A model generated the notes under the pieces. It was given only the letters and a program-made list of their open reading frames with translations, was not told where the DNA came from and did not search any database. Positions 2,610 to 21,913 of a stretch of 64,000 nucleotides of DNA are shown in pieces (the stretch's first letter is position 1; every line of letters begins with the position of its first letter). Position numbers and translations under genes: made by a program. The DNA is taken from NCBI RefSeq assembly GCF_037042905.1, contig NC_087246.1, positions 28,272,001-28,336,000 on the forward strand, read 5' to 3'. Origin of the DNA: Lytechinus pictus (Eukaryota).

Positions 2610-4637
2610 GGACGTTCCACATTTATGTTTTTGCGCATCATGATCTGCGCATATTGAACACTCCGCGCGCTGACGTCACAATGGATGAACTGGTGATTAA
2701 TCAGCTGTAGGTATGTGAGCTAATTTTTCTCCTTATCTGCACTAACTGCAGATCCGATGTAATATTTTATGAAGCTAAGAAACTGGAATTATTCCATGGA
2801 CCATTCTTTTTATTCCTCTACAATTTCAAAATACTTTTCTCTGTAGTGCTGCAAAGTATGATGAATATGACCCGAGTTTGAATAAAATAAAATGTAGAAT
2901 GGTTCGGAACTTTTCCTCACGTGTTTTGGGGTGTTTTAAGAAGCACATTTGCTCTAATAAGAGTGCTGATAGTTTGAAAAAAAGCAAATGAACCCATGTT
3001 TTTTTATGTTTACACCTCTTATGTATACCTTCCTCTACAACTTGGCAAAATTTGGTGAAATCGACATGGGTTTTGAATAAAGTGCAGCATTTATTTTACT
3101 TCTCAAGTTTGTTATTGAAATTTGAAATTTTTGAGGTTGAGTATTTGTTATTTCCCGCAATTTCTAAGAACTGAGAGTGCTGTTAGACCGTGAGCAAACA
3201 ATTGAAAGCAATATAAATAGATTATCCATATTAATGATACAATTATTAATCATATTGCAAAATTTGATGAAGTTTTCATGGATTTTGACTGAGTAATAGA
3301 GCTTTAAACTCATTGTTGTGATCTCGTGAGGTCTAAAATGCCAAATTCTTTGAATGCGCAATTCTTAAGAATATCTATTTGGGTTAACTTTGAAGCTATA
3401 TAGCAAAAAATCAAGCACATGGACCTCTGTTAATTTGTGCATATTTGGAATATTCAGGTGCTAAAGTGTCTATGTGCAAAGTATGATGAAGATGACATGG
3501 ATTTTCAATGTTTGGGAGCAAGACTACGGAACCATTCGCATTTTACACGGTATTAACAGACTTTTGCTTGTTTTCGGCGCATTGTGGGCTGTTTCAAGCC
3601 AACTCCCAACACCTTGGACACGGATAATTTGAAAACGAGCACATGGACCCCATAGTTTAAACGGCTTCAGAATGTATTCCTCTACAAATCTAGAGAGTGT
3701 GATAAAAATGACATGGATTTTGAATGTTTGGGGGGCAAAACTACGGAACCATTTGCCTTTTAGACAGTATTAGTAGACTATTGCACGTTTTCGGCGCACT
3801 TAAGGAGGATTTCAATATTTTCAAGCCGTCTCGCAACACTTTGGACCCTGATAGTTTAAAAACGAGCACATGGACCCCATATTTTTAATATGTTAACGGC
3901 TTCAGAATATATTCCTCTACAAATTTAGAGAGTATGATGAAAATGACATGGGTTTTGAATGTCTATAGGAGCAAAACTACGGAACCATACTCATTTAGAC
4001 TGTGTTATTAGACATTTGCACGTTTTCGGCGCATTTTAGCCGATTTTTAAGCCAACTCGCAACACTTTGGACACTTATAGTTAAAAGACGAACACATGGA
4101 CCCTATATTTTTACCTTCCCTACATCTTTCATATCCATTTCTCTACAGTTTAGCCGAATTTGATGAAAATGACATGGATTTTGAATAAAGTGCAGCTTAA
4201 ACTATACTTTTTTAAATTTTTGAGTAGATTCACGTCTTTGAAGATGTCTTTTTCCGAATTTTTGCACCATTCTTGCCAAATGAGGGCGCTGCTGACTCCA
4301 AATAGATATAGTTTTATCAATTAAAAGACTTTCTCCTTCTTTGGTATCTACTAAGTTACACATTCTGAAAGTTTGATGAACTTTGATGCAATATCGAGAG
4401 AGTAAAGATGATTTAAACTCATTTGGTGAATTCGTGAGGTCTAAGAGAGGCATAATTCTCATGATTGCGCAACATTTCTTATCATTTAAATACGGCGACT
4501 TTGAAGTCCCGTAGAAAAAAAATGAGCACATGAACCTATATTATTTTTTGCATTTTCATAATGCATAGATACCAAAGTAACTCTCTGCAAAATTTGGTGA
4601 AAATGACATGGACTTCGTTTTAACTGTGGAACGATCA
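2610..4637. mobile_element. Kolobok-like non-autonomous element with ~225-bp internal repeats
   Basis: Left TTAA|GGACGTTCCACA, right TGTGGAACGATC (right TTAA missing); motifs GCACATGGACC (about 3415, 3639, 3866, 4093, 4527) and GATGAAAATGACATGG(A/G)TTTTGA recur. Confidence 0.6.
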
Positions 4638-5594
4638 TTCCCCAAAACCTGGGGGGGATGATTGTACATGCCATCCCCCCCACCTTGTGAGGTGGGGGGG
4701 ATGCATCCCCCTCACCCCCCCCCCCCCCCGTTGTCTACGCCCCTGGACAATACCCAGAAAAACCAACGAACAACGAATCCGAAAAAAGACTATCCGCACC
4801 CATGCAAGCTAAGACAATGCATACCCTAGCAAGCATAGTTCGGTCTTATACATTGGTCCCCAAAACTATATATTTTTAAATTCACGTATATCATAAAAAT
4901 CTACAAAATGAATATTCATTTCATTAATATCACAATATCCAAGCACTTATATAGATTGCCTTGTGTAGCATAAACAAGTTATCGAATAGATATGTAAACA
5001 TAATTATGTAGGCATACATAATAATGCATGATACCCCGAATGACGAAGCATTATTTTCTCTGGAATCGGAGTTGATTTGGTTTGGGGGCGTGACGTCTAT
5101 CCGAAGATTCAAAGAATTTCAAATCCCAGTCTAATAATTGAGATCAGTTTGCATATACGAACCCTGATAAGATTAATTGCTGAAATGTTATTGAACTCTA
5201 ATAGCTCACTGTGGTCTGTCAACAAATTTATTTCTTAATTTTTAAATCGAGATTTTGCCAAAGGCTATAAGGGAGCAGAGCTGTAGGCCAGTATCGAAGT
5301 TTTGATGGGACAATTTTAATTTCAAGTCTGTAACTACAGCCTAAATGAACGTGTCTTTCGGTAATGCAGTTGATGTGGAAAATAAACTGTTTGGTAGGGT
5401 CAGAGGTAAAAAGATCAGAGGGAGATGAGTTGAGGTCAGGAATGATGCGATGATGAGCATGACATTGTCTTTAGTCAAGGTCAATGTTTAAACTCAATCG
5501 AGCAATGATGCACGCAGTCGGAAAAAACTTTAATGTAGCCGAGGGTGGTTCTCGGGGGTTTTAATTCATATTTAATACATATGAAATAAAATAT

Positions 5595-8149: not shown

Positions 8150-8690
8150 CGCCGATGTAACAGAAGGGCAATTCCATAGGTTGGTGGACATGAGCTCAAT
8201 GTGTCTTTGTACATATAGCCCATCTAAACCGTAACGTGAGTAACCACTTTATCTGCACCACTTGTAAAAACCATGTGTTCTTTATTTTTTTAATTATATA
8301 CAAATTTGTATCCCTAATATACTTCTTTGAAATGGATATAATCAACGTTCATAAAAGCCTTGCATGAGGACACTTTTCACTTAAGTCCACTTTTCATTTT
8401 ATGCATGTCCAAATCATGTAACGTGAGTAACCGACACATTTCAAAGATTTGCCAGGAGCATAATGAAATTTCCCAAGTTTTGTTTTTATACAAAGGATAG
8501 TCAGACTGCGTACTTTGTTGTGATAAAGAGATGTTTAGTTCCTATCAATAATAATGGAGTTACAGCTCCAAGTATGAGTCAAGGTGTCTCCAAATGTAAC
8601 GTGAGTAACCGTGGAATAGCCCAGAAGAATATAGTTCATAAATACAGTTTCGCCGATGTAACAGAAGAATATAGTTCATAAATACAATTT
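8150..8690 (+). repeat. 40-bp tandem duplication, first copy split by the MITE
   Basis: CGCCGATGTAACAGAA|GAATATAGTTCATAAATACAGTTT is split (8150-8165 + 8627-8650); an intact copy lies at 8651-8690. Confidence 0.85.
8166..8622. mobile_element. Sola-like MITE (GGG termini, 4-bp TSD)
   Basis: TIR GGGCAATTCCA / TGGAATAGCCC; TSD AGAA (8162-8165, 8623-8626); internal GTAACGTGAGTAACC at 8231, 8418 and 8596. Confidence 0.8.
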
Positions 8691-10796
8691 TGCCAATAGA
8701 ACACTACAATCATGTAAACTATGCGGTACATAATTAAATTTAATGTGTATAAGGTAGTCAAATCATCGATTAATATTTATAGGCCTTCCTGTTTATGGAG
8801 ACACATCATAAGCGTATGGAGAAAAAAAAGAGTAAATTATGCTTTAAACAGTCTGAACATGCCTAGTTTTTTTTTATTGTTCTGTGGCCGAGATCTCGAC
8901 CATAGATTGCCATAGTACCTCGAAAATTTGCTCAATGGAATTATGAAAAGTAATATACAAGGCTTGCTATGTTTTTATAATAAGATCTCATTTACAAATA
9001 ATTAATGTGTGTGTAAATCATACCTGTTGCCCCAGTTAACTAGATCAAGCCCTAGAATGCTGATATCAGCGCTTAAGGTGGGATTTTCGGGGGTGGGGTG
9101 GGGGGAATGAAACCCCTTTATAGAAACAATTATCAAAATAGGCGTATCACCTTATTTTCGAAATTGGTCAAAATCGTTAAGTCACCCCCTACATCTATGT
9201 GAACTGTTCTGGTGATGGCAACAATGAGTGCTGTAGGTTACCATCAAATGGCGTCAATTATACATGTTTCGAAGTTTCATTAAGCCCAATTAGTGACATG
9301 ATAATAAAGGAACTGTTAGCGCTAAGTGCTCGACTGTGCGTTGCGACCTTCGTTAGTTTGTGCTTTTCAAGAGCCGATATATGTTCGACCAAAGCAAACC
9401 AGATTGATGAAATGATTCATGTGTCAACATCCATACTACGAACAAGTGCGTAAGTACATGTATGTCGGTCACAACAGGCCTTAACGAAACATTCAATTAT
9501 AAAAAAAGAAACACACACAAACACAGTCGCTGTAATAAAAATTCACCATGTAACACCAAAGGTGTAGATATAACAAACAGAATAAAACTAATGGGTGTTG
9601 GACTACCACCATCAATTAAAAACTGCTGTAAAATGCTCGCCGTGGTTATCTCACAAACCATACTAGTGTAGTTTTAACTTAATTGCGCTTGTCTTGTCAT
9701 CCAATTATTAAAGCTAAGTACTACACATTGTTATAGAGGAAAGATGAATATCAATCATTCTAAAGAAATGAGGACTTATATTCTTGTTTAGTTGAAGTTT
9801 AAACCTCAGGTTGAATCATCAAATTAATACAAATTACACCCATTGTGTTGTAAGGCTGTCGTTGGGGGGGGGGGTATATAGTGGATGGATTTGTCGTCGA
9901 TCATATTGTCCAAGTACGTTTGATGATAAATTGTTGCCGGATTGGGCTGAGAACGACTTTGCACCAGATGTGGCGCCCTTGACACAATAATTTCTGCACT
10001 TATATATATATATATATATTTCAAACTCCCCATATGAGGACGGAAGCTGGCTTTCAATTTAGCAGAATGTGATACACCTCTTGCGGCATTCTGGTGATAA
10101 GTGATTACGCCTGAAAGTATTATATTGTATTTCATCTCTTTACGTTTACCAAAGGATCCCCAAATATCCTTATTGTTTGTGCATTAGGATGCTTGTACAT
10201 GGCTCCGGGGTTTTAATGGGAAACCAGCTGGTGATCTTGTCTTGGAGTCAATCGATGAAAATCCTTGTCTTTGTCGGCCAATGTAAGTGCGTGCTTAAAG
10301 TTAGGACGAGACTTCCCAACAAATCTATAAAAGTCTATGATACGCCTCTTTGGGGGGAGGGATTTATTTCCGGGATTTATAGTTCTAGAATGTGAAAATT
10401 TGTGTTTTTTTTGGTGGTAATGGTAGATAGACAATCACAATAAAAGAGACATAAGAGGGGTTATGATGATGAAGAGCTATAATAGGGATAGTGGCATATC
10501 TAGACGAAACAACCGTCGAGACGGTGGAAAGTTTGAAATTCGCGACCCTCCACCATTAATGATGCAGAAGAGTTTCGCCGACATCCCCCGGTGACATCTC
10601 ACCCCTTTTCTATTTTCTACTCTGGTTGCTTCTTTGGTAGCTCATGATATGAAATTTCAAAGTGCCCTTTTTATTATTATTCTGCTCTCCTTATTTTGCA
10701 CCAACGGATGACATGTCACCTTGTTCCTTGAAAACGACCCTGCCTGGATGTTCCATAATTAGGTATGGAAATTTTACATTTCTATTGTTCACTGCA

Positions 10797-11179
10797 TGGA
10801 CATGATATTTTCACAATATTGTTGTTGTATAGAGAACGGATTCCCCAAGATCCGGGCCCAAGATACTCCTTTAGCAAGTTTACCTCGACACAATCGTTCA
10901 CTGTATGGAAATGATATTTTCACAATATTGTTGTTGTATAGAGAACGGATTTCCCAAGATACTCCTTTAGCAAGTTTACCTCGACACAATCGTTCACTGT
11001 ATGGAAATGATATTTTCACAATATTGTTGTTGTATAGAGAACGGATTCCCCAAGATACTCCTTTCTCAAGTTTACCTCGACACAATTGTTTACTGTATGG
11101 AAATGATATTTTCACAATATTGTTGTTGTATAGAGAACGGATTCCCCAAGATACTCCTTTCTCAAGTTTACCTCGACAC
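10797..11179 (+). repeat. 96-bp minisatellite, about 4 copies
   Basis: ATGATATTTTCACAATATTG at 10802, 10911, 11007 and 11103; the first unit has a 13-bp insertion. Confidence 0.95.
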
Positions 11180-13647: not shown

Positions 13648-15199
13648 GACGAGAGTAAAACCCCCGTCCCTTCTTCCACATCCCCTCCCTCCCTCCCTCC
13701 CTCCCTCACTGAACAGTGACCTGAACCTCACGTGCTCTCCTAATATAGAACGAACAAAGTGGATGGGATAGAGAGGGGGAAAATAGGATAAGGCAATTTG
13801 GGGGGATATCACCAGAGTAGAAAATATCGTCGTGATCCAATAAAGAAAGTCATAGATACCTGAAGAAGACGTCATTTCTTGGGGTTCCCTTGTACTTCCT
13901 CATTCTGTTCATTCATCTTTTCTGGGATAAAGGAATAAGATGTGGCTGCGCATGAATATCATAGTTCTACTCATCAATATAATTCTTGTCTTTTGTTTAA
14001 AATAGGTTCATCTGTTGCTAATTGGGGCTAATTGCCTATCGATTTTTGTTTGTTTAACTTCAGAGGCCCCTACAGATGATTGTCAAACGTATTAGTACTA
14101 TTACATATGTCAAAGTAGAAGGCCACCATCCAAAGCAAATCTCGTTTTTGTCACTTGCATAAGATTAGACGTCATCCACCCCAGGCAAAAATAAGGAAAA
14201 GGAATCTCGGCATAAACAGTACTTCCCTAAAAAATGATGATTATGACAAGGTAGACTCATTTGTCAGCGCATTATTGGTTTTGTGACTGAACAGGAACAA
14301 TGGGTCAGATACATATAAAAAGTAGGAATTGTTTTTGCTGTAAGCTTTTGCTTGATTCCGTATGCATAACAATGAGCGACCAAATGCTTTTGCTGGTAAG
14401 CTCAAGCAATTGCTAACTGCCAGGTAGCATTACATTATTATTACATTTACATCCATCCAGTTTGTAACCTTCCTGACAGCCATTTTATATTAATTGATCA
14501 CTAAAAAAATCATTTATTGAATATATCTAATCATTAGGCCTACATGTACAACAAAGGTTCCATGTTACTATCCGGTAGGGCAAAATATGTCTTCTTTTAT
14601 TGAGCCCCTTGATAATATTATATAACATTGTATAACGTATAAGAGTCTTGCCTGCTAGCCCTATTTCTAGGAATAATAATTCATAAAGTGACCAGAAAAA
14701 AATGTTCAGAAATCTGTTAATGTTATTCGACTTGAAAATGGAATGAATGCGATGAGGAAGTAATGTTTAGTTGTTGTTTCGAGGGGGGACATGGATGGAA
14801 TTCTGAAAAGTCTCGTAAGTTTTGTTTTAAACTTTCCTCTCGAGTCCCCCATTATTCAATAGACCTCCAAATGTGTATTCTTAAAACTCAATTAAGTCGA
14901 TTTGGACTGCTCCCCAATCCCCTATTGAACCGACTTGGCTAACCAAATGTGCTCTTACATTGTAGAATAGCTTACTTATATTCTCAATAAACTAGCAGTT
15001 GTTCTACTGCAATTCAAATCTTCGCACACGCTTTTTTAGTCCGGGGGCTGGGAGAGTTTATTCAGCTGATCGGGTACAAAAGGTTTGATGGTCCCATCAT
15101 GTTGGCATGAAGGCAGTGATTAAGGAAAAGTGTTGCTGCCTGGCCATATCCTGTACGGAAGGCCCTGATGGCCCAAAATAGGGGCCCCAAAAATTGGTT

Positions 15200-16215
15200 T
15201 ATTCAGCTGAAAAGGTACATGGCTAATTCTTTTTGCAATGGACCGAGTATACATTGGGATTTTCAAAAATACCCATGCCAGCAATTTTATCCTGTACGGG
15301 GGCCCAGACAGTAGGCCCAAAAGGGCCCCCCGAAAATGGGTTTATTCAGCTGAAAAGGTACATGGCTAATTCTTTTTGCAATGGACCGAGAATACATTGG
15401 GATTTCCCAAAATACCCATGCCAGCAACTTTATCCTGTACGGGGGCCCAGACAGTAGCCCCAAAGTGCCCATATATCCCGTATATGTCCCACAACTAATT
15501 CATTAAGCTAAAAATGTAAATGGATAATTCCTTTTGCAATGGAGGCAGTATACATTGGGATTTTCAAAAATACCCATGCCAGCAATTTCATCCTGTACGG
15601 GGGCCCAGACAGTAGGCCCGAAAGGGCCCCCCGAAAATGGGTTTATTCAGCTGAAAAGGTACATGGCTAATTATTTTTGCAATGGACCGAGAATACATTG
15701 GGATTTCCCAAAATACCCATGCCAGCAACTTTATCCTGTACGGGGGCCCAGACAGTAGCCCCAAAGTGCCCATATCTCCTGTATAATATGTCCTACTACT
15801 AATTTATTAAGCTAAAAATGTACAAGGGGAATTCATTTTGCAATGGAGGCAGTACACATTGGGATTTTCTAAAATACCCATGCCATGCCAGCAATTTAAT
15901 CCCGTGTAGGGGCCCAGACAGTAGGCCCGAAGGGCCCCCGAAAATGTGGTTATTCAGCTAAAAAGGTACATGGCTAATTCTTTTTTAAAATGGAATCTGC
16001 ATACTTTAAGGCTCACAAAACTACCCATGCCAGCAATTTTACCCTGTACGGGGGCCCAGACTGTAGTCCCAATGTGCCCATATGCCCCACAACTAATTTA
16101 TTCAGCTAGAATGTACATGGATAATTCCTTTTGAAATAGAGGAAGTATACAATGCGATTTTAAAAGAAAAAAAAACCTTGCCAGCAACTTCATCCTGTAT
16201 AGTGCTTCCAGACTA
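15200..16215 (+). repeat. Left-arm satellite, alternating 143/158-bp monomers (301-bp dimer)
   Basis: ATT(C/A)AGCT anchors at 15201, 15344, 15502 and 15645; duplicated ORFs 15233/15534 and 15287/15588 are 301 bp apart. Confidence 0.9.
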
Positions 16216-16764
16216 CTGTACATCATGGCTTCCACAACTCAGGTGAGAAATGTTAATTGTACTCTTAATGTTAATTGTACTTTTATTCAAACCGATTTGA
16301 CTGATTAAACTATTTGTTGAACATAATAATGATCAAGCATCATACATTAGTTATCAACAATAAAAGTTTGTGCATATTTCATTAATGTCTATATACTTCA
16401 TAATTAATCAATCATTACTTGTTGCTCAAAACAACAAATTAAATGATACAGTAGATTAAACCAGTTGATGCAATAAAAAGATTACAGCAACCGTAAAGTA
16501 GCACTTAGGAATGACCTTGAAGGTGGCAGCAGGGCCAAATGCAAAAAAAATGAAATGTTCTTTTACTCCAATTTTCTCCAAACATGTATTGCATTAATTG
16601 TAGTATATAGTCAACATTCCTCTTTGCATGCACATTTTATGATCACAACTGCATGCCCTCACTTGCCAGATACAATGTCCCGCCATGCGTGGATCAAGTG
16701 GGCATCAAATCCCCCTCCTCCCCTCAAAAGAGGGGGGGATAGAAAAAACAATAGGGAATGGGAA

Positions 16765-18846
16765 GGGGACTGAGGGAGAAGAGAAAAGGAGAGCGGAAAG
16801 GATAAGAGGTGGAAAAGAGAGAAAATGGTGAAGGGTTGAGAATGAAAAGGAGGAAATAGAAAACGAGAAGGGAACGGGGGAGGGGAGAGAGAAAGAAGGG
16901 GAGGTAAGAGAGAAAAATGAGAAGGGGAAGAGAGATAGGGAGGGAAAGGGAAGGGGAAAGAGAAAAGGAAGCAGGGAGACTAAGGAAGGGGAGAGTGAAC
17001 GATAATAGACAAGGAGAGGGTGAGAGAGGGAAGGGGAAGGGAAGAGAAAGAGGAAATGTAAAAACCAATAGAGATTGAGAAAAAAAGAATAAAAGATAGA
17101 GAAGGGGAGAAAAATGATAACTGGATAAAGGAAAGTGATTGAGGAAACAGAAGGATATAAAGGCGATCATATAATAGGGGGAAGGAAAGGATAATAAAAA
17201 TGTATTTTTGTTTGACAAAAGCCCTTGCCGTCTCGTATAAAATAAAAAAATAAAAATAAAGAATGGGTTTTGGAAGCTGAAGCAGCATCGTCCCTTAAAT
17301 GGCGACGCACAGGATTATGAGGGATAAAAGAGGAATATAACAAGAAAGTGGGAAGAAGTTTTTAAAATATATAAACGTGGAAATAGAAAGAAAAGAAACC
17401 GAAATGAGAGAAAGAGGAGAATTGGCAAATACCACACATTTCAGGTTAATAAATCAAAATAAGATTTTATTCCGGCCTTTAACTATCATCACCAAAAGGA
17501 ATAAATATTAGTATTAGGCACACGGCAATATACTCCTGTAGCCCTTGTTGTGATGATTACAAACCACTTGAAAGATAATTACAAACCACCTCGCTTCACT
17601 TGCCCACATATTGATATTATACCAACTTCAGTAACTAAGAAAACTGTTATAATATAGGTATTTAAAAATTGTCATAGGCTTAACAAGAAAGATGGTAATG
17701 TTAGCCAGGTACACGCTTATATTTTCCCATGTTTTGGGTGTCCCCCAAATTTTGAATTTAATCTCAATATTTCTATGATCACCCACTGCTAGGACCGGAT
17801 CTACGTCACTGGGGAATGAGAAGGAAAAGAAGAGGGGGGGGGGGGGGGGGTAGGGAAAGGGTGAGGGGCTATGGGAAAAGGGAGCCAGAGAGGAAAGAAG
17901 TGAAGGGAAAAGAGGGGGGAAAAGAGCGGGAGAAGGGAAATAAGGGGGAAGGGAAAGGGACTGAGGGAGAGGAGAAAGGGAGAGCGGAAAGGACAGGAAG
18001 TGGAAAAGAAAGAAGAAAGTAAAGGGGGGAGAAATGGAGGAAATAGAAAATGAAAAGAGATTAGAGGAGTGGAGAGAAAAGTCAGGAGAGTAAAGAGAGA
18101 AAATGAGAAGGGGCATATAGATGGGAGAGAGTGCGAAGGGGACAAAGAGAAAGAATGAGAAGGAAAGAGTGAAGAGGGGAGAGAAAAGGAATGGGGAAGA
18201 TAAAAAAAGAGAGAAAAGGAAGGGAGAGAGAGAAGGAAACTGGGAGAGACTAAAGAAAAGGGAGAGTGAACAAAATAGAGGAAAGAGGGAAGGGGAAGGG
18301 AAGAGAAAGAGGAAATATAAAAACTAGGAAATACAGGAAGAACAGAATAAAAGATAGAGAAAATGAGAAAAAGGATAATTGGATTAAGGAAATTGATTGA
18401 GGAAACATGCAGGATATATAGACGATCATAATGTTAATAGGGAAAAGAGAAATGAATAACAGTAAATGGAAGAAATGATTTTTTTTTAACAAAAGCCCTT
18501 GCCGTCTCGTAAAAAAAATGAAAAGGGAAAATATATGGGAAGATGAAGTTGGATCTTGGAAGCTGAAGCAGCCTCGTACCTTTGATGCCGACACAAAGGA
18601 TTATGAGGGATAAAAGAGGAAAATAACAAGAAAGGAGGAAGAAGTTTTTAAAAATATAATAGAAGTGGAAATGGAAAGAAAAGTAACCAAAAATATCACA
18701 ACTTTCAGGTTAATAGATTAAAATACTATTCTACTATATTCGGGCCTTTAACTGTAATCACCAAAAGTGATGGTAGTATTAGGCACACGGCAAAGTACTC
18801 CCATATCCATAGCACTTGTTGTGATAATTACAAACCACTTGAAAGA
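16765..18846 (+). repeat. Diverged direct duplication (16765-17575 vs 17955-18846), purine-rich
   Basis: Anchors in the same order: GGGACTGAGGGAGA, AAAAGCCCTTGCCGTCTCGTA, GGATTATGAGGGATAAAAGAGGA, GTATTAGGCACACGGCAA, TTACAAACCACTTGAAAGA. Confidence 0.85.
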
Positions 18847-19179
18847 GGTATTTGGGGATACGCCATTCTGCGCGCTACCTTCGCTCGCTACTAGCTGCTA
18901 CTGTCATTATTTCAGTTAAAGAAATATTATGCATGTTTCAATCTATTTTGTAAACCCTCACTTACAATGTAGTCATGTAAATAATTATCCCTCTATGTTT
19001 TTAGCCCAGTAAATCAAGTGTGGTATTTCCGCCAGTTCCAAGCATATATTCGATATCCCCAAATGAAACTACATGTATAGGCCTATATATTGCACACTGG
19101 GCCCCTTTCAGGTATATATTACTGGAAATAAGGACCAAGGTATACTGATTACACTACAAAATTAATTATCCATGTACTA

Positions 19180-20945
19180 GTATATCCTATTACCCTAGGG
19201 GCTTTTGGGGTTGACTGCGTGTCTGGGCCTTATACAGAATAAACTTGATGGCATTGGCATGATGGTATCTTTTAAAAACCTTAGCTGAGTGCATACAAAT
19301 TCCATCCAAAAAAGTTATATCCATGTATCACTTCTGCCGAAAAAATAATTATTGTTAGACATCTGTTTCCTTTTTGGCTGCTATCTGGGCCCCCATACAG
19401 AGTAAATTTGCTGGAATTGACAATTATCCATGCATGTATGTCTTCAGCCTAAAATACACTTTTGGGGGAGGGGCACTATGGGGCTAATGTCTGGGCCCCC
19501 GTACAGGATAAAATTGCTGGCATGTGTATTTGTGTGAACCTTACAGTATGCAGATTCCATCTTAAAAAATAATTGACCATGTACCTTTTCAGCTGAATAA
19601 CCCCATTTTTGGCGGCCCTTTGGTCCTACTGTCTGGGCCCCCGTACAGGATGAAGTTGCTGGCATGCGTATTTTTGAAAATCCCATTGCATACTGCCTCA
19701 ATTACAAAATGAATTATCCATGTACATTCTAGCTGAATAGCTGAATAAATTAGTTGTGGGGCATATTGGCACTTTGGGGCTACTGTCTGGGCCCCCTTAC
19801 AGGGTAAAATGGCTGGCATGGGTAGTTTTGTGAGCCTTAAAGTATGCAGATTCCATTTTAAAAAGAATTAGCCATGTACCTTTTCAGCTGAACAACCCCA
19901 CTTTCGGGGGCCCTTCGGGCCTACTCTCTGGGCCCCGTACAGGATGAAGTTGCTGGCATGAGTTTTTCTTTTCAAATCGCATTGTATACTGCCTCCATTT
20001 CAAAAGAAATTATCCGTGTACATTTTCAGCTGAATAAATTAGTTGTGAGACATATATGGGCACTTTGGGGCTACTGTCTGGGCCCCCGTAAAGGATAAAG
20101 TTGCTGGCATGGGTATTTTAGGAAATCCCAATATATACTCGGTCCATTGCAAAAATAATTAGCCATGTACCTTTTTAGCTTAATAAATTAGTTGTGGGAC
20201 ATATACGGGATATATGGGCACTTTGGGGCTACTGTCTGGGCCCCCGTACGGGATAAAATTGCTGGCATGGGTATTTTTGAAAATCCCAATGTATACTGCC
20301 TCCATTGCAAAAGGAATCATCCATGTACATTTTTAGCTTAATAAATTAGTTGTGGGACATATACGGGATATATGGGCACTTTGGGGCTACTGTCTGGGCC
20401 CCCGTACAGGATAAAGTTGCTGGCATGGGTATTTTGGGAAATCCCAATGTATTCTCGGTCCATTGCAAAAAGAATTAGCCATGTACCTTTTCAGCTGAAT
20501 AAACCCATTTTCGGGGGGCCCTTTTGGGCCTACTGTCTGGGCCCCCGTACAGGATAAAATTGCTGGCATGGGTATTTTTGAAAATCCCAATGTATACTGC
20601 CTCCATTGCAAAAGGAATTATCCATGTACATTTTTAGCTTAATAAATTAGTTGTGGGACATATACGGGATATATGGGCACTTTGGGGCTACTGTCTGGGC
20701 CCCCGTACAGGATAAAGTTGCTGGCATGGGTGTTTTGGGAAATCCCAATGTATACACGGTCCATTGCAAAAAGAATTAGCCATGTACCTTTTCAGCTGAA
20801 TAAACCCATTTTCGGGGGGCCCTTAGGGCCTACTGTCTGGGCCCCCGTACAGGATAAAGTTGCTGGCATGGGTATTTTTAAAAATCTCAATGTATACTCG
20901 GTCCATTGCAAAAAGAATTAGCCATGTACCTTTTCAGCTGAATAA
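19180..20945 (-). repeat. Right-arm satellite, inverted, longer than the left arm and degenerating inward
   Basis: Reverse complement of the left-arm monomer (CTACTGTCTGGGCCCCCGTACAGGATAAA.TTGCTGGCATGGGTA); ORFs 20372/20673 are 301 bp apart. Confidence 0.9.
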
Positions 20946-21532
20946 ACCAATTTTTGGGGCCCCTATTTGGGGCTATCAGGGCCTTCCGTACAGGATATGG
21001 CCCGGCAGCAACACTTTTCCTTAATCACTGCCTTCATGCCAACATGATGGGACCATCAAACCTTTTGTACCCGATCAGCTGAATAAACTCTCCCAGCCCC
21101 CGGACTATTTGCTTTCGTTTCTTTCTTTCTGTTCGTATATTTTCCTTTTTTTCTTATGGGACTGGAGTATCTACTGACGTTGAACTAAGTAAATTTAACA
21201 GCTCAATCTACGCTATTACATTTGACATTTGCCTCAACATTCCCTTATAAATTAAAGTGGTACCAATTTACAAGAAGAATTACAGATGTAATCTTCCAAT
21301 TCGTAGATACGTTGGTATCTACCCACGTTATTCTTGAGTAACATTTGTTTTGAAATACAATCTTGAAAAATATCATAATGGCATTGACCGAAAAAAAATA
21401 CGGGAGCCTACAATTCCGACGTCGATTTATGTGAATTAAAGTCCTTCCTAATGCTTGCATAATATAAGATTTATTCGGATATCGTTCACTCTAAATTATT
21501 CAGGGTAATATTGACAAAGGAACCAGATCTGT

Positions 21533-21913
21533 GGTTACACTTCGTATTTCCGAAGGTTCGTTATTCCGAAACATGTAAATTGCCTATACCTCGATGTTCG
21601 TTAATCCGAAAACAAAATAAGGTTCGTAAGTCCGAAAACGAGATAAGGTTCGTTATTCCGAAGGTTCGTTTGTCCGAAAACGAAATAAGGATCGTTATTC
21701 CGAAGGTTCGTTAATCCGAAAAGGAATAAGGTTCGCAATTCGGATTAACGAACCTTATTTCGTTTTTGGACTAACGAACCTTCTTTTTTGTTTTCGGACT
21801 AACGAATCTTCGGAATAACGAACCTTATTGCGTTTTCGGACTAACTAGCCTTTGGAGTAACGAACCTTATTTCGTTTTCGGATTAACGAACCTTCGGAAT
21901 TACGAATGTAACC
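21533..21913. mobile_element. Small foldback MITE built from TCCGAA/GGTTCGTTA units
   Basis: Ends GGTTACA(C)TTCGTA / TACGAATGTAACC; units switch orientation near 21740; flanks ATCTGT and TGCTGT (imperfect). Confidence 0.85.

What the first reader, a model, noticed from the sequence alone, without database searches (positions are those of the whole stretch)
15037..21107. 6-kb foldback transposon whose arms are an inverted higher-order satellite
Seen: the terminal 104 bp are a perfect inverted repeat. Each arm then continues as tandem monomers alternating 143 and 158 bp (a 301-bp dimer), about 1.2 kb on the left and 1.9 kb on the right, around ~3 kb of non-coding cargo. The termini are TAG...CTA with TTT on both sides. 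Known: as I recall, Academ elements have YR..YR termini, 3-4 bp TSDs and long TIRs, and foldback elements have repeat-built arms. Inference: a young non-autonomous Academ-like family that carries and amplifies a satellite with higher-order structure. The alternative reading is a TA TSD with GTCC ends. This is the best candidate for an undescribed system in the window.
Basis: partly seen in the sequence, partly recalled or inferred. Interest (0 to 1): 0.8.

Follow-up and report, generated by a model that had tools for sequence, protein, structure and literature searches.

The report
Sea-urchin foldback transposon with satellite arms
This 6.1-kb stretch is a real, non-coding "foldback" jumping gene whose two inverted arms are built from a two-part tandem repeat; it belongs to a family with hundreds of ends in the genome, the architecture is long known, and the proposed Academ affiliation could not be confirmed.

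Summary
Window 15037-21107 has a perfect 104-bp terminal inverted repeat. Its arms are 1.2 kb and 1.9 kb of alternating 143- and 158-bp monomers, forming a 301-bp dimer. The 2.9-kb middle has no credible ORF or Rfam match. Termini are TAG...CTA with TTT on both sides.

Contigs from three individuals show it is a mobile family. Summed word depth jumps from about 10-45 in the flank to 8,300-10,900 in the first 200 bp. In each run, 8-12 contigs stop exactly at base 15037 and continue into unrelated sequences. Depth falls steadily inward, so copies share ends but differ inside.

I read it as a non-autonomous cut-and-paste transposon of foldback architecture, like FB, Tetris, Galileo and the sea-urchin TU elements. 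The superfamily is unresolved. A TTT (3-bp) and a TA target duplication fit this single copy about equally well, and no second two-ended copy, empty site or transposase-bearing relative could be reached. "Academ-like" therefore remains untested. I found no sign of satellite arrays outside the elements.

The scan has unchecked first-reader notes of similar satellite-armed foldbacks on other pieces of this genome. I could not test whether they are the same family.

The parts
15034..15036 (.). Left flank TTT: candidate 3-bp target-site duplication. The alternative is TA at 15037-15038 as the TSD.
   Evidence: Sequence read directly; chance of a 3-mer flank match is 0.019.
15037..15140 (+). Left perfect terminal inverted repeat (104 bp), starting TAGTCCGGGGG.
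   Evidence: In each of runs X1, X5 and X7, 8-12 contigs end exactly at 15037 and run into unrelated flanks.
15037..15197 (+). Left terminal domain: a 20-bp unique head followed by a diverged monomer, about 76-81% alike to arm monomers over aligned columns.
   Evidence: summed word depth 8,300-10,900 against 12-43 in the adjacent flank bin.
15198..15883 (+). Left arm, young part: alternating 143- and 158-bp monomers (301-bp dimer).
15884..16240 (+). Left arm, inner part: older diverged monomers, including a third subtype.
   Evidence: In other copies the sequence before 16201 is different (loose end at 16201).
16241..16635 (.). Left spacer of the middle domain, AT-rich and non-coding.
16636..17772 (+). 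Middle-domain unit 1 (about 1.1 kb, with a GA-rich core), near single copy in other individuals.
   Evidence: 16726-17575 is 71% alike to 17920-18846; depth is 4-100 over 16437-17636.
17773..18850 (+). Middle-domain unit 2, a direct repeat of unit 1. Its 3' half is moderately repeated in the genome.
   Evidence: depth is 300-1,250 over 18237-19436.
18851..19179 (.). Right spacer of the middle domain.
   Evidence: contigs 3-5% diverged at depth 320-630 (table 8).
19180..19960 (-). Right arm, inner part: degenerate monomers. About 460 bp of it has no counterpart in the left arm.
19961..20264 (-). One extra 304-bp dimer in the right arm relative to the left. The alignment chose this position; any of the repeated dimers could be the extra one.
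   Evidence: Gapped arm alignment.
20265..20946 (-). Right arm, young part: alternating 143- and 158-bp monomers.
20947..21107 (-). Right terminal domain; its outer 104 bp (21004-21107) is the perfect inverted repeat.
   Evidence: It carries the family-consensus bases where the left arm has private changes at 15141 and 15175.
21108..21110 (.). Right flank TTT: candidate 3-bp target-site duplication.

Best explanation
This is one copy of a non-autonomous cut-and-paste DNA transposon with foldback architecture, in what earlier agents of this scan identified as a sea-urchin genome. Each end has a 20-bp unique head followed by a chain of about 150-bp monomers. The monomers derive from the terminal region itself and are organised as a 301-bp dimer.

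Inferred mechanism: a transposase encoded elsewhere recognises the outermost 100 bp or so, and probably also the motifs repeated in every monomer (TTTATTCAGCTG and the ATCCTGTACGGGGGCCCAGAC core). It cuts at TAG...CTA and reinserts the whole unit. The target duplication is most likely 3 bp (TTT here, about 50%), otherwise TA (about 35-40%).

The arms grow and shrink by unequal exchange or slippage in dimer steps. The ends are the most copied part of the family, while interiors are reshuffled, as expected from gap repair after excision.

Shown: the anatomy, multi-copy status, the sharp shared end, the inward fall in copy number, and the dimer-sized length difference between arms. Inferred: transposase binding to the monomers, the TSD length and the repair mechanism.
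For: A 104-bp perfect TIR and arms collinear over 1,140 bp. Dimeric higher-order repeat. The terminal domain is a diverged monomer, with TTTATTCAGCTG and ATCCTGTACGG retained. No ORF, no Rfam family and no protein relative. Summed word depth rises from 12-43 in the flank to 8,300-10,900 in the first 200 bp, then falls to 3,500-5,400, 1,000-1,800 and 150-240 going inward. In each run, 8-12 contigs end exactly at 15037 and continue into flanks that agree only about 0.45 with one another, which means many different insertion sites. The right arm carries one extra 304-bp dimer. Close precedents exist: Tetris has a flanking domain, tandem repeats derived from it and a non-coding middle, and the tandem repeats in Galileo's TIRs hold extra transposase-binding sites (PMC4079207).
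Against: No second two-ended copy, empty site or autonomous partner was seen, so mobility rests on contig ends and depth rather than on paired TSDs. The tool warns that summed contig depth is not a copy number. The left arm/middle junction near 16200 is not the majority arrangement (loose end at 16201), so this copy may be a rearranged derivative that can no longer move. No DNA run was listed for the junction stretch 14967-15066, so presence or absence in other individuals is unknown.
Confidence: 0.8

Rival explanations
1. It is specifically a non-autonomous member of the Academ superfamily (AcademX lineage, 3-4 bp TSD). This is a sub-case of the best explanation.
For: TTT lies on both sides, and a 3-mer flank match is only 0.019 likely by chance across the window. 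AcademX makes 3-4 bp TSDs (PMC10045372). A TAG...CTA end looks less like the usual Tc1/mariner start than GTCC would require (my recollection, not tested).
Against: The TSD comes from one copy in a T-rich target, and TA fits equally well. Other superfamilies also make 3-bp TSDs (CMC, Zator, PIF/Harbinger; from memory). Repbase assigns non-autonomous elements by TSD length plus agreement of terminal positions 1-11 with a classified family (PMC4455052), and that could not be tested. No Academ transposase sequence or terminus was available.
Confidence: 0.3
2. It is a TA-targeting element (Tc1/mariner/pogo-like or another 2-bp-TSD group) whose true ends are GTCC...GGAC. The flanking TTT match is then a coincidence of a T-rich target.
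For: TA precedes GTCC at both ends. Both flanks are T-rich, which raises the chance of a TTT match.
Against: TA is its own reverse complement, so it may simply be part of the inverted repeat. The chance that a repeat starts with TA (0.078) is higher than the chance of a 3-mer flank match (0.019). A GTCC start is unusual for Tc1/mariner ends (from memory).
Confidence: 0.35
3. The foldback form is secondary. It arose as a head-to-head fusion of a long family member (right arm plus middle) with a truncated inverted copy (left arm), and may or may not still move as a unit. This concerns origin only and is compatible with the best explanation.
For: The right arm is longer. The middle next to it is shared by more copies (depth 300-1,250) than the middle next to the left arm (4-100). 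In other individuals, 16201 onward is preceded by a different sequence, with agreement 0.95. The two middle units are direct repeats, not inverted ones.
Against: Both arms carry the same ordered series of monomer subtypes over 1,140 bp, as expected of a symmetric parent. No contig shows the unfused parent.
Confidence: 0.3
4. It is an immobile local inverted duplication of a satellite block, or an assembly artefact such as a palindromic long read.
For: Inverted duplications are a known artefact of long-read assemblies. No run was listed that holds the junction stretch.
Against: The arms differ by about 60 substitutions and indels, one dimer and about 460 bp, and they enclose an asymmetric 2.9-kb middle. 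A missed-adapter palindrome would be perfect and have no spacer. The same end abuts many different flanks in three individuals. Contigs of run X13 match the middle and the inner right arm with no differences.
Confidence: 0.04

Closest known systems
Tetris (Drosophila virilis foldback element; Dias et al. 2014, PMC4079207)
   Same: Apparently non-autonomous. It has long TIRs made of an outer flanking domain, a variable number of tandem repeats of about 220 bp that share a stretch with the flanking domain, and an inner domain. The middle domain is non-coding and variable, and many rearranged forms exist. Repeat number differs between arms and between alleles.
   Different: Tetris makes 8-10 bp TSDs; this element has no matching 7-10 bp flanks. 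Tetris repeats also form kb-size free arrays, and I saw no sign of that here. The arm repeat here is a two-monomer higher-order unit. There is no sequence relationship.
Drosophila FB elements and Galileo (P superfamily)
   Same: Arms are built of tandem repeats. [quoted passage not shown] 2013, as cited in PMC4079207), which is the role I infer for the monomers here.
   Different: These elements make 7-9 bp TSDs (from memory for FB and Galileo). Some copies encode a transposase; none was found here.
TU elements of Strongylocentrotus purpuratus (Liebermann et al. 1983, cited in PMC4079207)
   Same: Foldback transposons with modular long inverted repeats and heterogeneous middles, in a sea urchin.
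   Different: From memory, TU outer domains are roughly 15-bp tandem repeats with 8-bp TSDs. Here the monomers are 143 and 158 bp and there is no 8-bp TSD. A small element of the TU style lies 430 bp downstream, at 21533-21913, and is unrelated in sequence.
AcademX DNA transposons
   Same: A possible 3-bp TSD and TA-initial ends; AcademX makes 3-4 bp TSDs (PMC10045372).
   Different: No transposase or nuclease gene was found, no terminal comparison was possible, and the TSD is ambiguous.
Tandem-repeat-containing MITEs (DTC84, pearl; PMC3879986)
   Same: Non-autonomous elements that carry satellite-like repeats of about 150-160 bp and link mobile elements to satellites.
   Different: In those elements a single central array in one orientation lies between short 10-20 bp inverted repeats, with AA 'TSDs' and a microsatellite tail, and they are possibly Helitron-like. 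Here two inverted arrays form the arms themselves.

Membership tests
Foldback-type elements (structural class) | Long terminal inverted repeats built largely of tandem repeats around a non-coding middle domain | tested here: met
   no ORF.
Foldback-type elements (structural class) | Dispersed multi-copy family with a defined end abutting different flanks | tested here: met
   8-12 contigs per run end at 15037 with unrelated continuations, and terminal depth is hundreds of times the flank depth.
FB / Tetris / TU lineages | TSD of 8-10 bp | tested here: not met
   The flanks ...ACGCTTTTT and TTTGCTTTC... share no direct repeat of 4-10 bp at the boundary.
Academ (AcademX) | TSD of 3-4 bp | tested here: inconclusive
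   TTT on both sides of one copy; TA is an equally valid reading; chance values are 0.019 and 0.078.
Academ (AcademX) | Terminal positions 1-11 agree with a classified Academ family (Repbase rule, PMC4455052) | not testable with these tools
   No Repbase or Dfam sequences and no source-genome search were available. The Academ papers are not held.
Academ (AcademX) | Encodes, or is mobilised by, an Academ DDE transposase | not testable with these tools
   This copy is non-coding, and no partner could be reached.
Tc1/mariner/pogo | TA target-site duplication | tested here: inconclusive
   TA is present at both ends but is also part of the palindromic terminus.
hAT | 8-bp TSD | tested here: not met
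   CGCTTTTT against TTTGCTTT.
Higher-order-repeat satellite | Monomer types alternate, and same-type monomers are much more alike than neighbouring ones | tested here: met
   Same-type monomers are 94-100% alike and different types about 77%. Period 301 is found by TRF. The length difference between arms is one dimer.
Higher-order-repeat satellite | Long free-standing arrays outside the element | tested here: inconclusive
   Monomer depth is about half the terminal depth, which argues against large arrays, but summed contig depth is a poor measure.

The most novel reading that the evidence does not exclude
The family is the first foldback-architecture lineage of a 3-bp-TSD superfamily such as Academ. 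Its monomers would be arrays of working transposase-binding or pseudo-terminal sites: each 158-bp monomer ends in TATGTCC, 16 nt before the TTTATT head, echoing the TAGTCC terminus 20 nt before the first TTTATT. Use of alternative ends and gap repair would then continually rebuild the dimeric array, making this a live intermediate between a transposon end and a higher-order satellite.
Probability: 0.2. Interest if true: 0.5.

Novelty: new member of a known kind. Interest (0 to 1): 0.3.

Why it matters
Foldback elements are hot spots for inversions, deletions and satellite birth. A family with hundreds of ends and kilobase inverted arms is therefore a likely source of structural variation and assembly trouble in this sea-urchin genome. 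The copy shows a transposon end that duplicated into a dimeric higher-order repeat, with length changes in whole-dimer steps. That is a small, tractable model for how higher-order structure starts. The general phenomenon is well documented, however (FB, Tetris, Galileo, TU). The family may already be in Repbase or Dfam, which I could not consult.

Tried and rejected
1. A scan of metagenome contigs for the 18-nt terminus gave 41 loci. BLAST against the element showed nothing beyond the seed, so all were chance hits.
2. Scans of prokaryotic genome contigs and viral contigs for the terminus and the monomer core gave 0 hits.
3. I tried to reach other copies through ORFs called on public contigs. 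The 66-aa arm ORF has no relative in the protein collection, and two exact-sequence look-ups found nothing on record.
4. No paralogous empty site exists in the window: neither flank, nor the two hypothetical joined flanks, matches anything else there.
5. A run search on the left junction stretch (100 bp, only 5 sampled words) listed no DNA run, so insertion polymorphism could not be judged.
6. A search of papers for the monomer core sequence gave 0 papers.
7. The Academ reference papers (Kojima 2020; Yuan and Wessler 2011) are not held.
8. Look-ups of earlier findings by sequence and by the terminal motif returned nothing.
9. I considered and rejected hAT, MuDR/FB, P, Transib and piggyBac/Kolobok-type TSDs: no matching 4-10 bp flanks and no TTAA. 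I also rejected PIF/Harbinger TWA, because TTA on the left would pair with TAT on the right. A Helentron-like origin is unlikely given kilobase inverted arms.
10. The statistical contrast between the perfect outer 104 bp and the next stretch is modest once gaps are allowed: about 3.8% divergence, giving P of about 0.02 for zero differences in 104 bp. I therefore do not lean on it.
Full report
**Observation.** The structure is exactly as described.
- The two ends are perfect reverse complements for 104 bp. Ungapped extension gives 306 nt at 95% and a further 465 nt at 98% in the same register.
- Tandem Repeats Finder reports a 301-bp period on both sides: 15198-16165 with 3.2 copies and 19471-20946 with 4.9 copies, with 143- and 158-bp sub-periods.
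- Spacing of a conserved anchor is 143,158,143,166,142,151 on the left and 142,158,143,158,158,151,140,154,142 on the right.
- The terminus and the 36-nt monomer core occur only inside 15037-21107; none is expected in shuffled sequence.
- The flanks read ...GCTTTTT|TAGTCC...GGACTA|TTTGC.

**Anatomy of the arms.**
- All-against-all monomer identities show two alternating types. Same-type monomers are 94-100% alike and different types about 77%, so this is a genuine dimeric higher-order repeat.
- A multiple alignment shows that the types differ in a body segment and in one of two alternative tails, which produces the 143 and 158 bp lengths. A third, older subtype occupies the inner positions.
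- The most conserved columns are TTTATTCAGCTG, AAAAGGTACATGG, CATGCCAGCAA and ATCCTGTACGGGGGCCCAGAC.
- The terminal domain is itself a diverged monomer, about 76-81% alike over aligned columns, preceded by a 20-bp unique head. The arms therefore look like serial duplications of the end region.
- A gapped alignment shows the arms are collinear over the whole 1,140 bp of the left arm. Differences are 0 in bases 1-104, about 3.8% in 105-846 and about 10% in 847-1140.
- The right arm carries one extra 304-bp dimer and about 460 bp more of degenerate monomers. Array length therefore changes in whole-dimer steps.

**Middle domain.** The 2.9-kb middle (16241-19179) consists of an AT-rich spacer, two direct units of about 1.1 kb that are 71% alike with a GA-rich core (48% A, 40% G), and a second spacer. 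The only long ORFs are low-complexity frames across the GA-rich tracts. Nothing matched Rfam at E up to 0.1, and an arm ORF has no relative in the protein collection.

**Is it mobile and multi-copy?** I laid Logan contigs of three DNA runs of the same organism (three samples), plus one run labelled as a second organism, on 14437-20436.
- Summed word depth is 12-43 in the last flank bin and 8,324, 10,282 and 10,927 in the first 200 bp of the element.
- Going inward it falls to 3,500-5,400, then 1,000-1,800, then 150-240.
- Part of the middle (16437-17636) sits near single-copy level, while 18237-19436 sits at 300-1,250.
- In each of these three runs, 8-12 contigs match up to exactly 15037 and then continue into sequences that agree only about 0.45 with each other. 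These are many different flanks. In X7 a further 10 contigs end at 15036.
- Both ends of every copy pile onto the one terminus in the laid stretch. Single-copy-like contigs have depths of about 17-55, so the family has on the order of a hundred or more elements. The tool warns that such depth is not a copy number.
- At 15141 and 15175 essentially all contigs carry the base found in this copy's right arm. The left arm therefore has private changes.
- The inward fall in depth, a second sequence continuing after 15165, and a different sequence preceding 16201 in other individuals all indicate a modular family that shares ends and differs inside.

**What it is.** The best reading is a non-autonomous cut-and-paste transposon of foldback architecture.
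- The closest described case is Tetris of Drosophila virilis. It has an outer flanking domain, tandem repeats that share a stretch with that domain, an inner domain, a non-coding variable middle, rearranged forms, and repeat-number differences between arms and alleles (PMC4079207).
- The same paper cites evidence that the tandem repeats in Galileo's TIRs hold additional transposase-binding sites. It also cites earlier foldback elements in the sea urchin.
- By analogy, I infer that the motifs conserved in every monomer are secondary binding sites. I also infer that the ends are the most copied part because double-strand gap repair after excision proceeds from the ends inward. Neither inference was tested.

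**Superfamily.** No 4-10 bp direct repeat flanks the element. This excludes the TSD classes of FB, Tetris, TU, hAT, MuDR, P and Transib for this copy. Two readings remain: TTT as a 3-bp TSD with TAG...CTA ends, or TA as the TSD with GTCC...GGAC ends.
- Across the window, a 3-mer flank match at this spacing has probability 0.019 and TA has frequency 0.078. Taken at face value this favours the 3-bp reading about fourfold.
- Both flanks are T-rich, which erodes that advantage.
- The boundary at 15037 in other copies fits both readings, because TA would be invariant under the second.
- The plurality bases outside it are A or T in every run.
- AcademX does make 3-4 bp TSDs (PMC10045372). However, Repbase assigns non-autonomous elements by TSD length plus agreement of terminal positions 1-11 (PMC4455052), and I had no Academ termini, no transposase and no access to the rest of the genome.
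- I put about 50% on a 3-bp TSD (about 30% on Academ specifically), 35-40% on TA, and the rest on something else.

**Attempts to reach other copies.**
- The metagenome scan gave only chance hits.
- Prokaryotic and viral collections gave nothing.
- Exact-protein look-ups gave nothing.
- The window holds no paralogous empty site.
- The run index listed no DNA run for the junction stretch.

**Rivals.** An immobile inverted duplication or an assembly palindrome is very unlikely, for three reasons:
- The arms differ by about 60 events, one dimer and 460 bp, and they enclose an asymmetric middle.
- The same end abuts many flanks in three individuals.
- Contigs of run X13 match the middle and the inner right arm without a single difference.

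A head-to-head fusion origin of this particular copy is possible. The right arm is longer, the middle next to it is shared by more copies, and the junction near 16200 is not the majority arrangement. That origin is compatible with the main reading.

**Novelty and score.** Architecture, behaviour and even the hierarchical arm repeats have precedents, so I class this as a new member of a known kind. The family may already be catalogued. Points of modest interest are the clean dimeric higher-order unit derived from the transposon end and the possibility of a foldback lineage in a 3-bp-TSD superfamily. Interest: 0.3.

**Earlier scan notes.** First readers noted satellite-armed foldback elements on other pieces of this genome (s1-317775, s1-320213, s1-317612, s1-311649, s1-323349). 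None had a follow-up at the time, and I could not test whether they are the same family. The organism label 'sea urchin' comes from other agents' reports, not from a test of mine.

Noticed in passing
window 21533-21913: A roughly 380-bp miniature foldback lies 430 bp downstream of the element. Its two inverted arms are built of 16-, 26- and 42-bp tandem units (GGTTCGTTAnTCCGAAAAC and variants), and the inverted repeat extends out to GGTTACA...TGTAACC. It resembles the short-unit TU style of sea-urchin foldbacks and is unrelated in sequence to the 6-kb element.
   Followed up: partly
window 16357-19889 (run X13): A low-depth run labelled as a different organism (B) holds contigs with zero differences to the middle domain and inner right arm. 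The three organism-A DNA runs hold only copies that are 4-8% diverged there. One X13 contig joins about 19863-19940 to 18636-19003 and then to a 90%-alike copy of 16054-16174. This is either a rearranged variant or a low-depth misjoin.
   Followed up: no
window 15110 and 15165 (loose ends): In run X5, five contigs at 15110 and three at 15165 share the outer 74-129 bp of the terminus and then continue with a different, mutually consistent sequence (agreement 0.85-0.99). This points to a second family with the same ends, possibly a MITE or the autonomous partner.
   Followed up: no
window 10857-11179: A 96-bp tandem repeat, 3.4 copies at 97% identity.
   Followed up: no
window 3480-4186: A 226-235-bp tandem repeat of about 3 copies, 75-78% matches.
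   Followed up: no
window 14697-14839: A stretch of the left flank is itself a dispersed repeat. Contigs of 657 and 893 nt from two individuals match only this part, with 13 differences (tables 3 and 8).
   Followed up: no
window 15037-16200: Several runs flagged as probable RNA from the same organism hold 9-14% of the sampled words of the left arm, so arm sequences may be transcribed. With inverted arms, any such transcript could fold into a long hairpin. This could not be examined.
   Followed up: no
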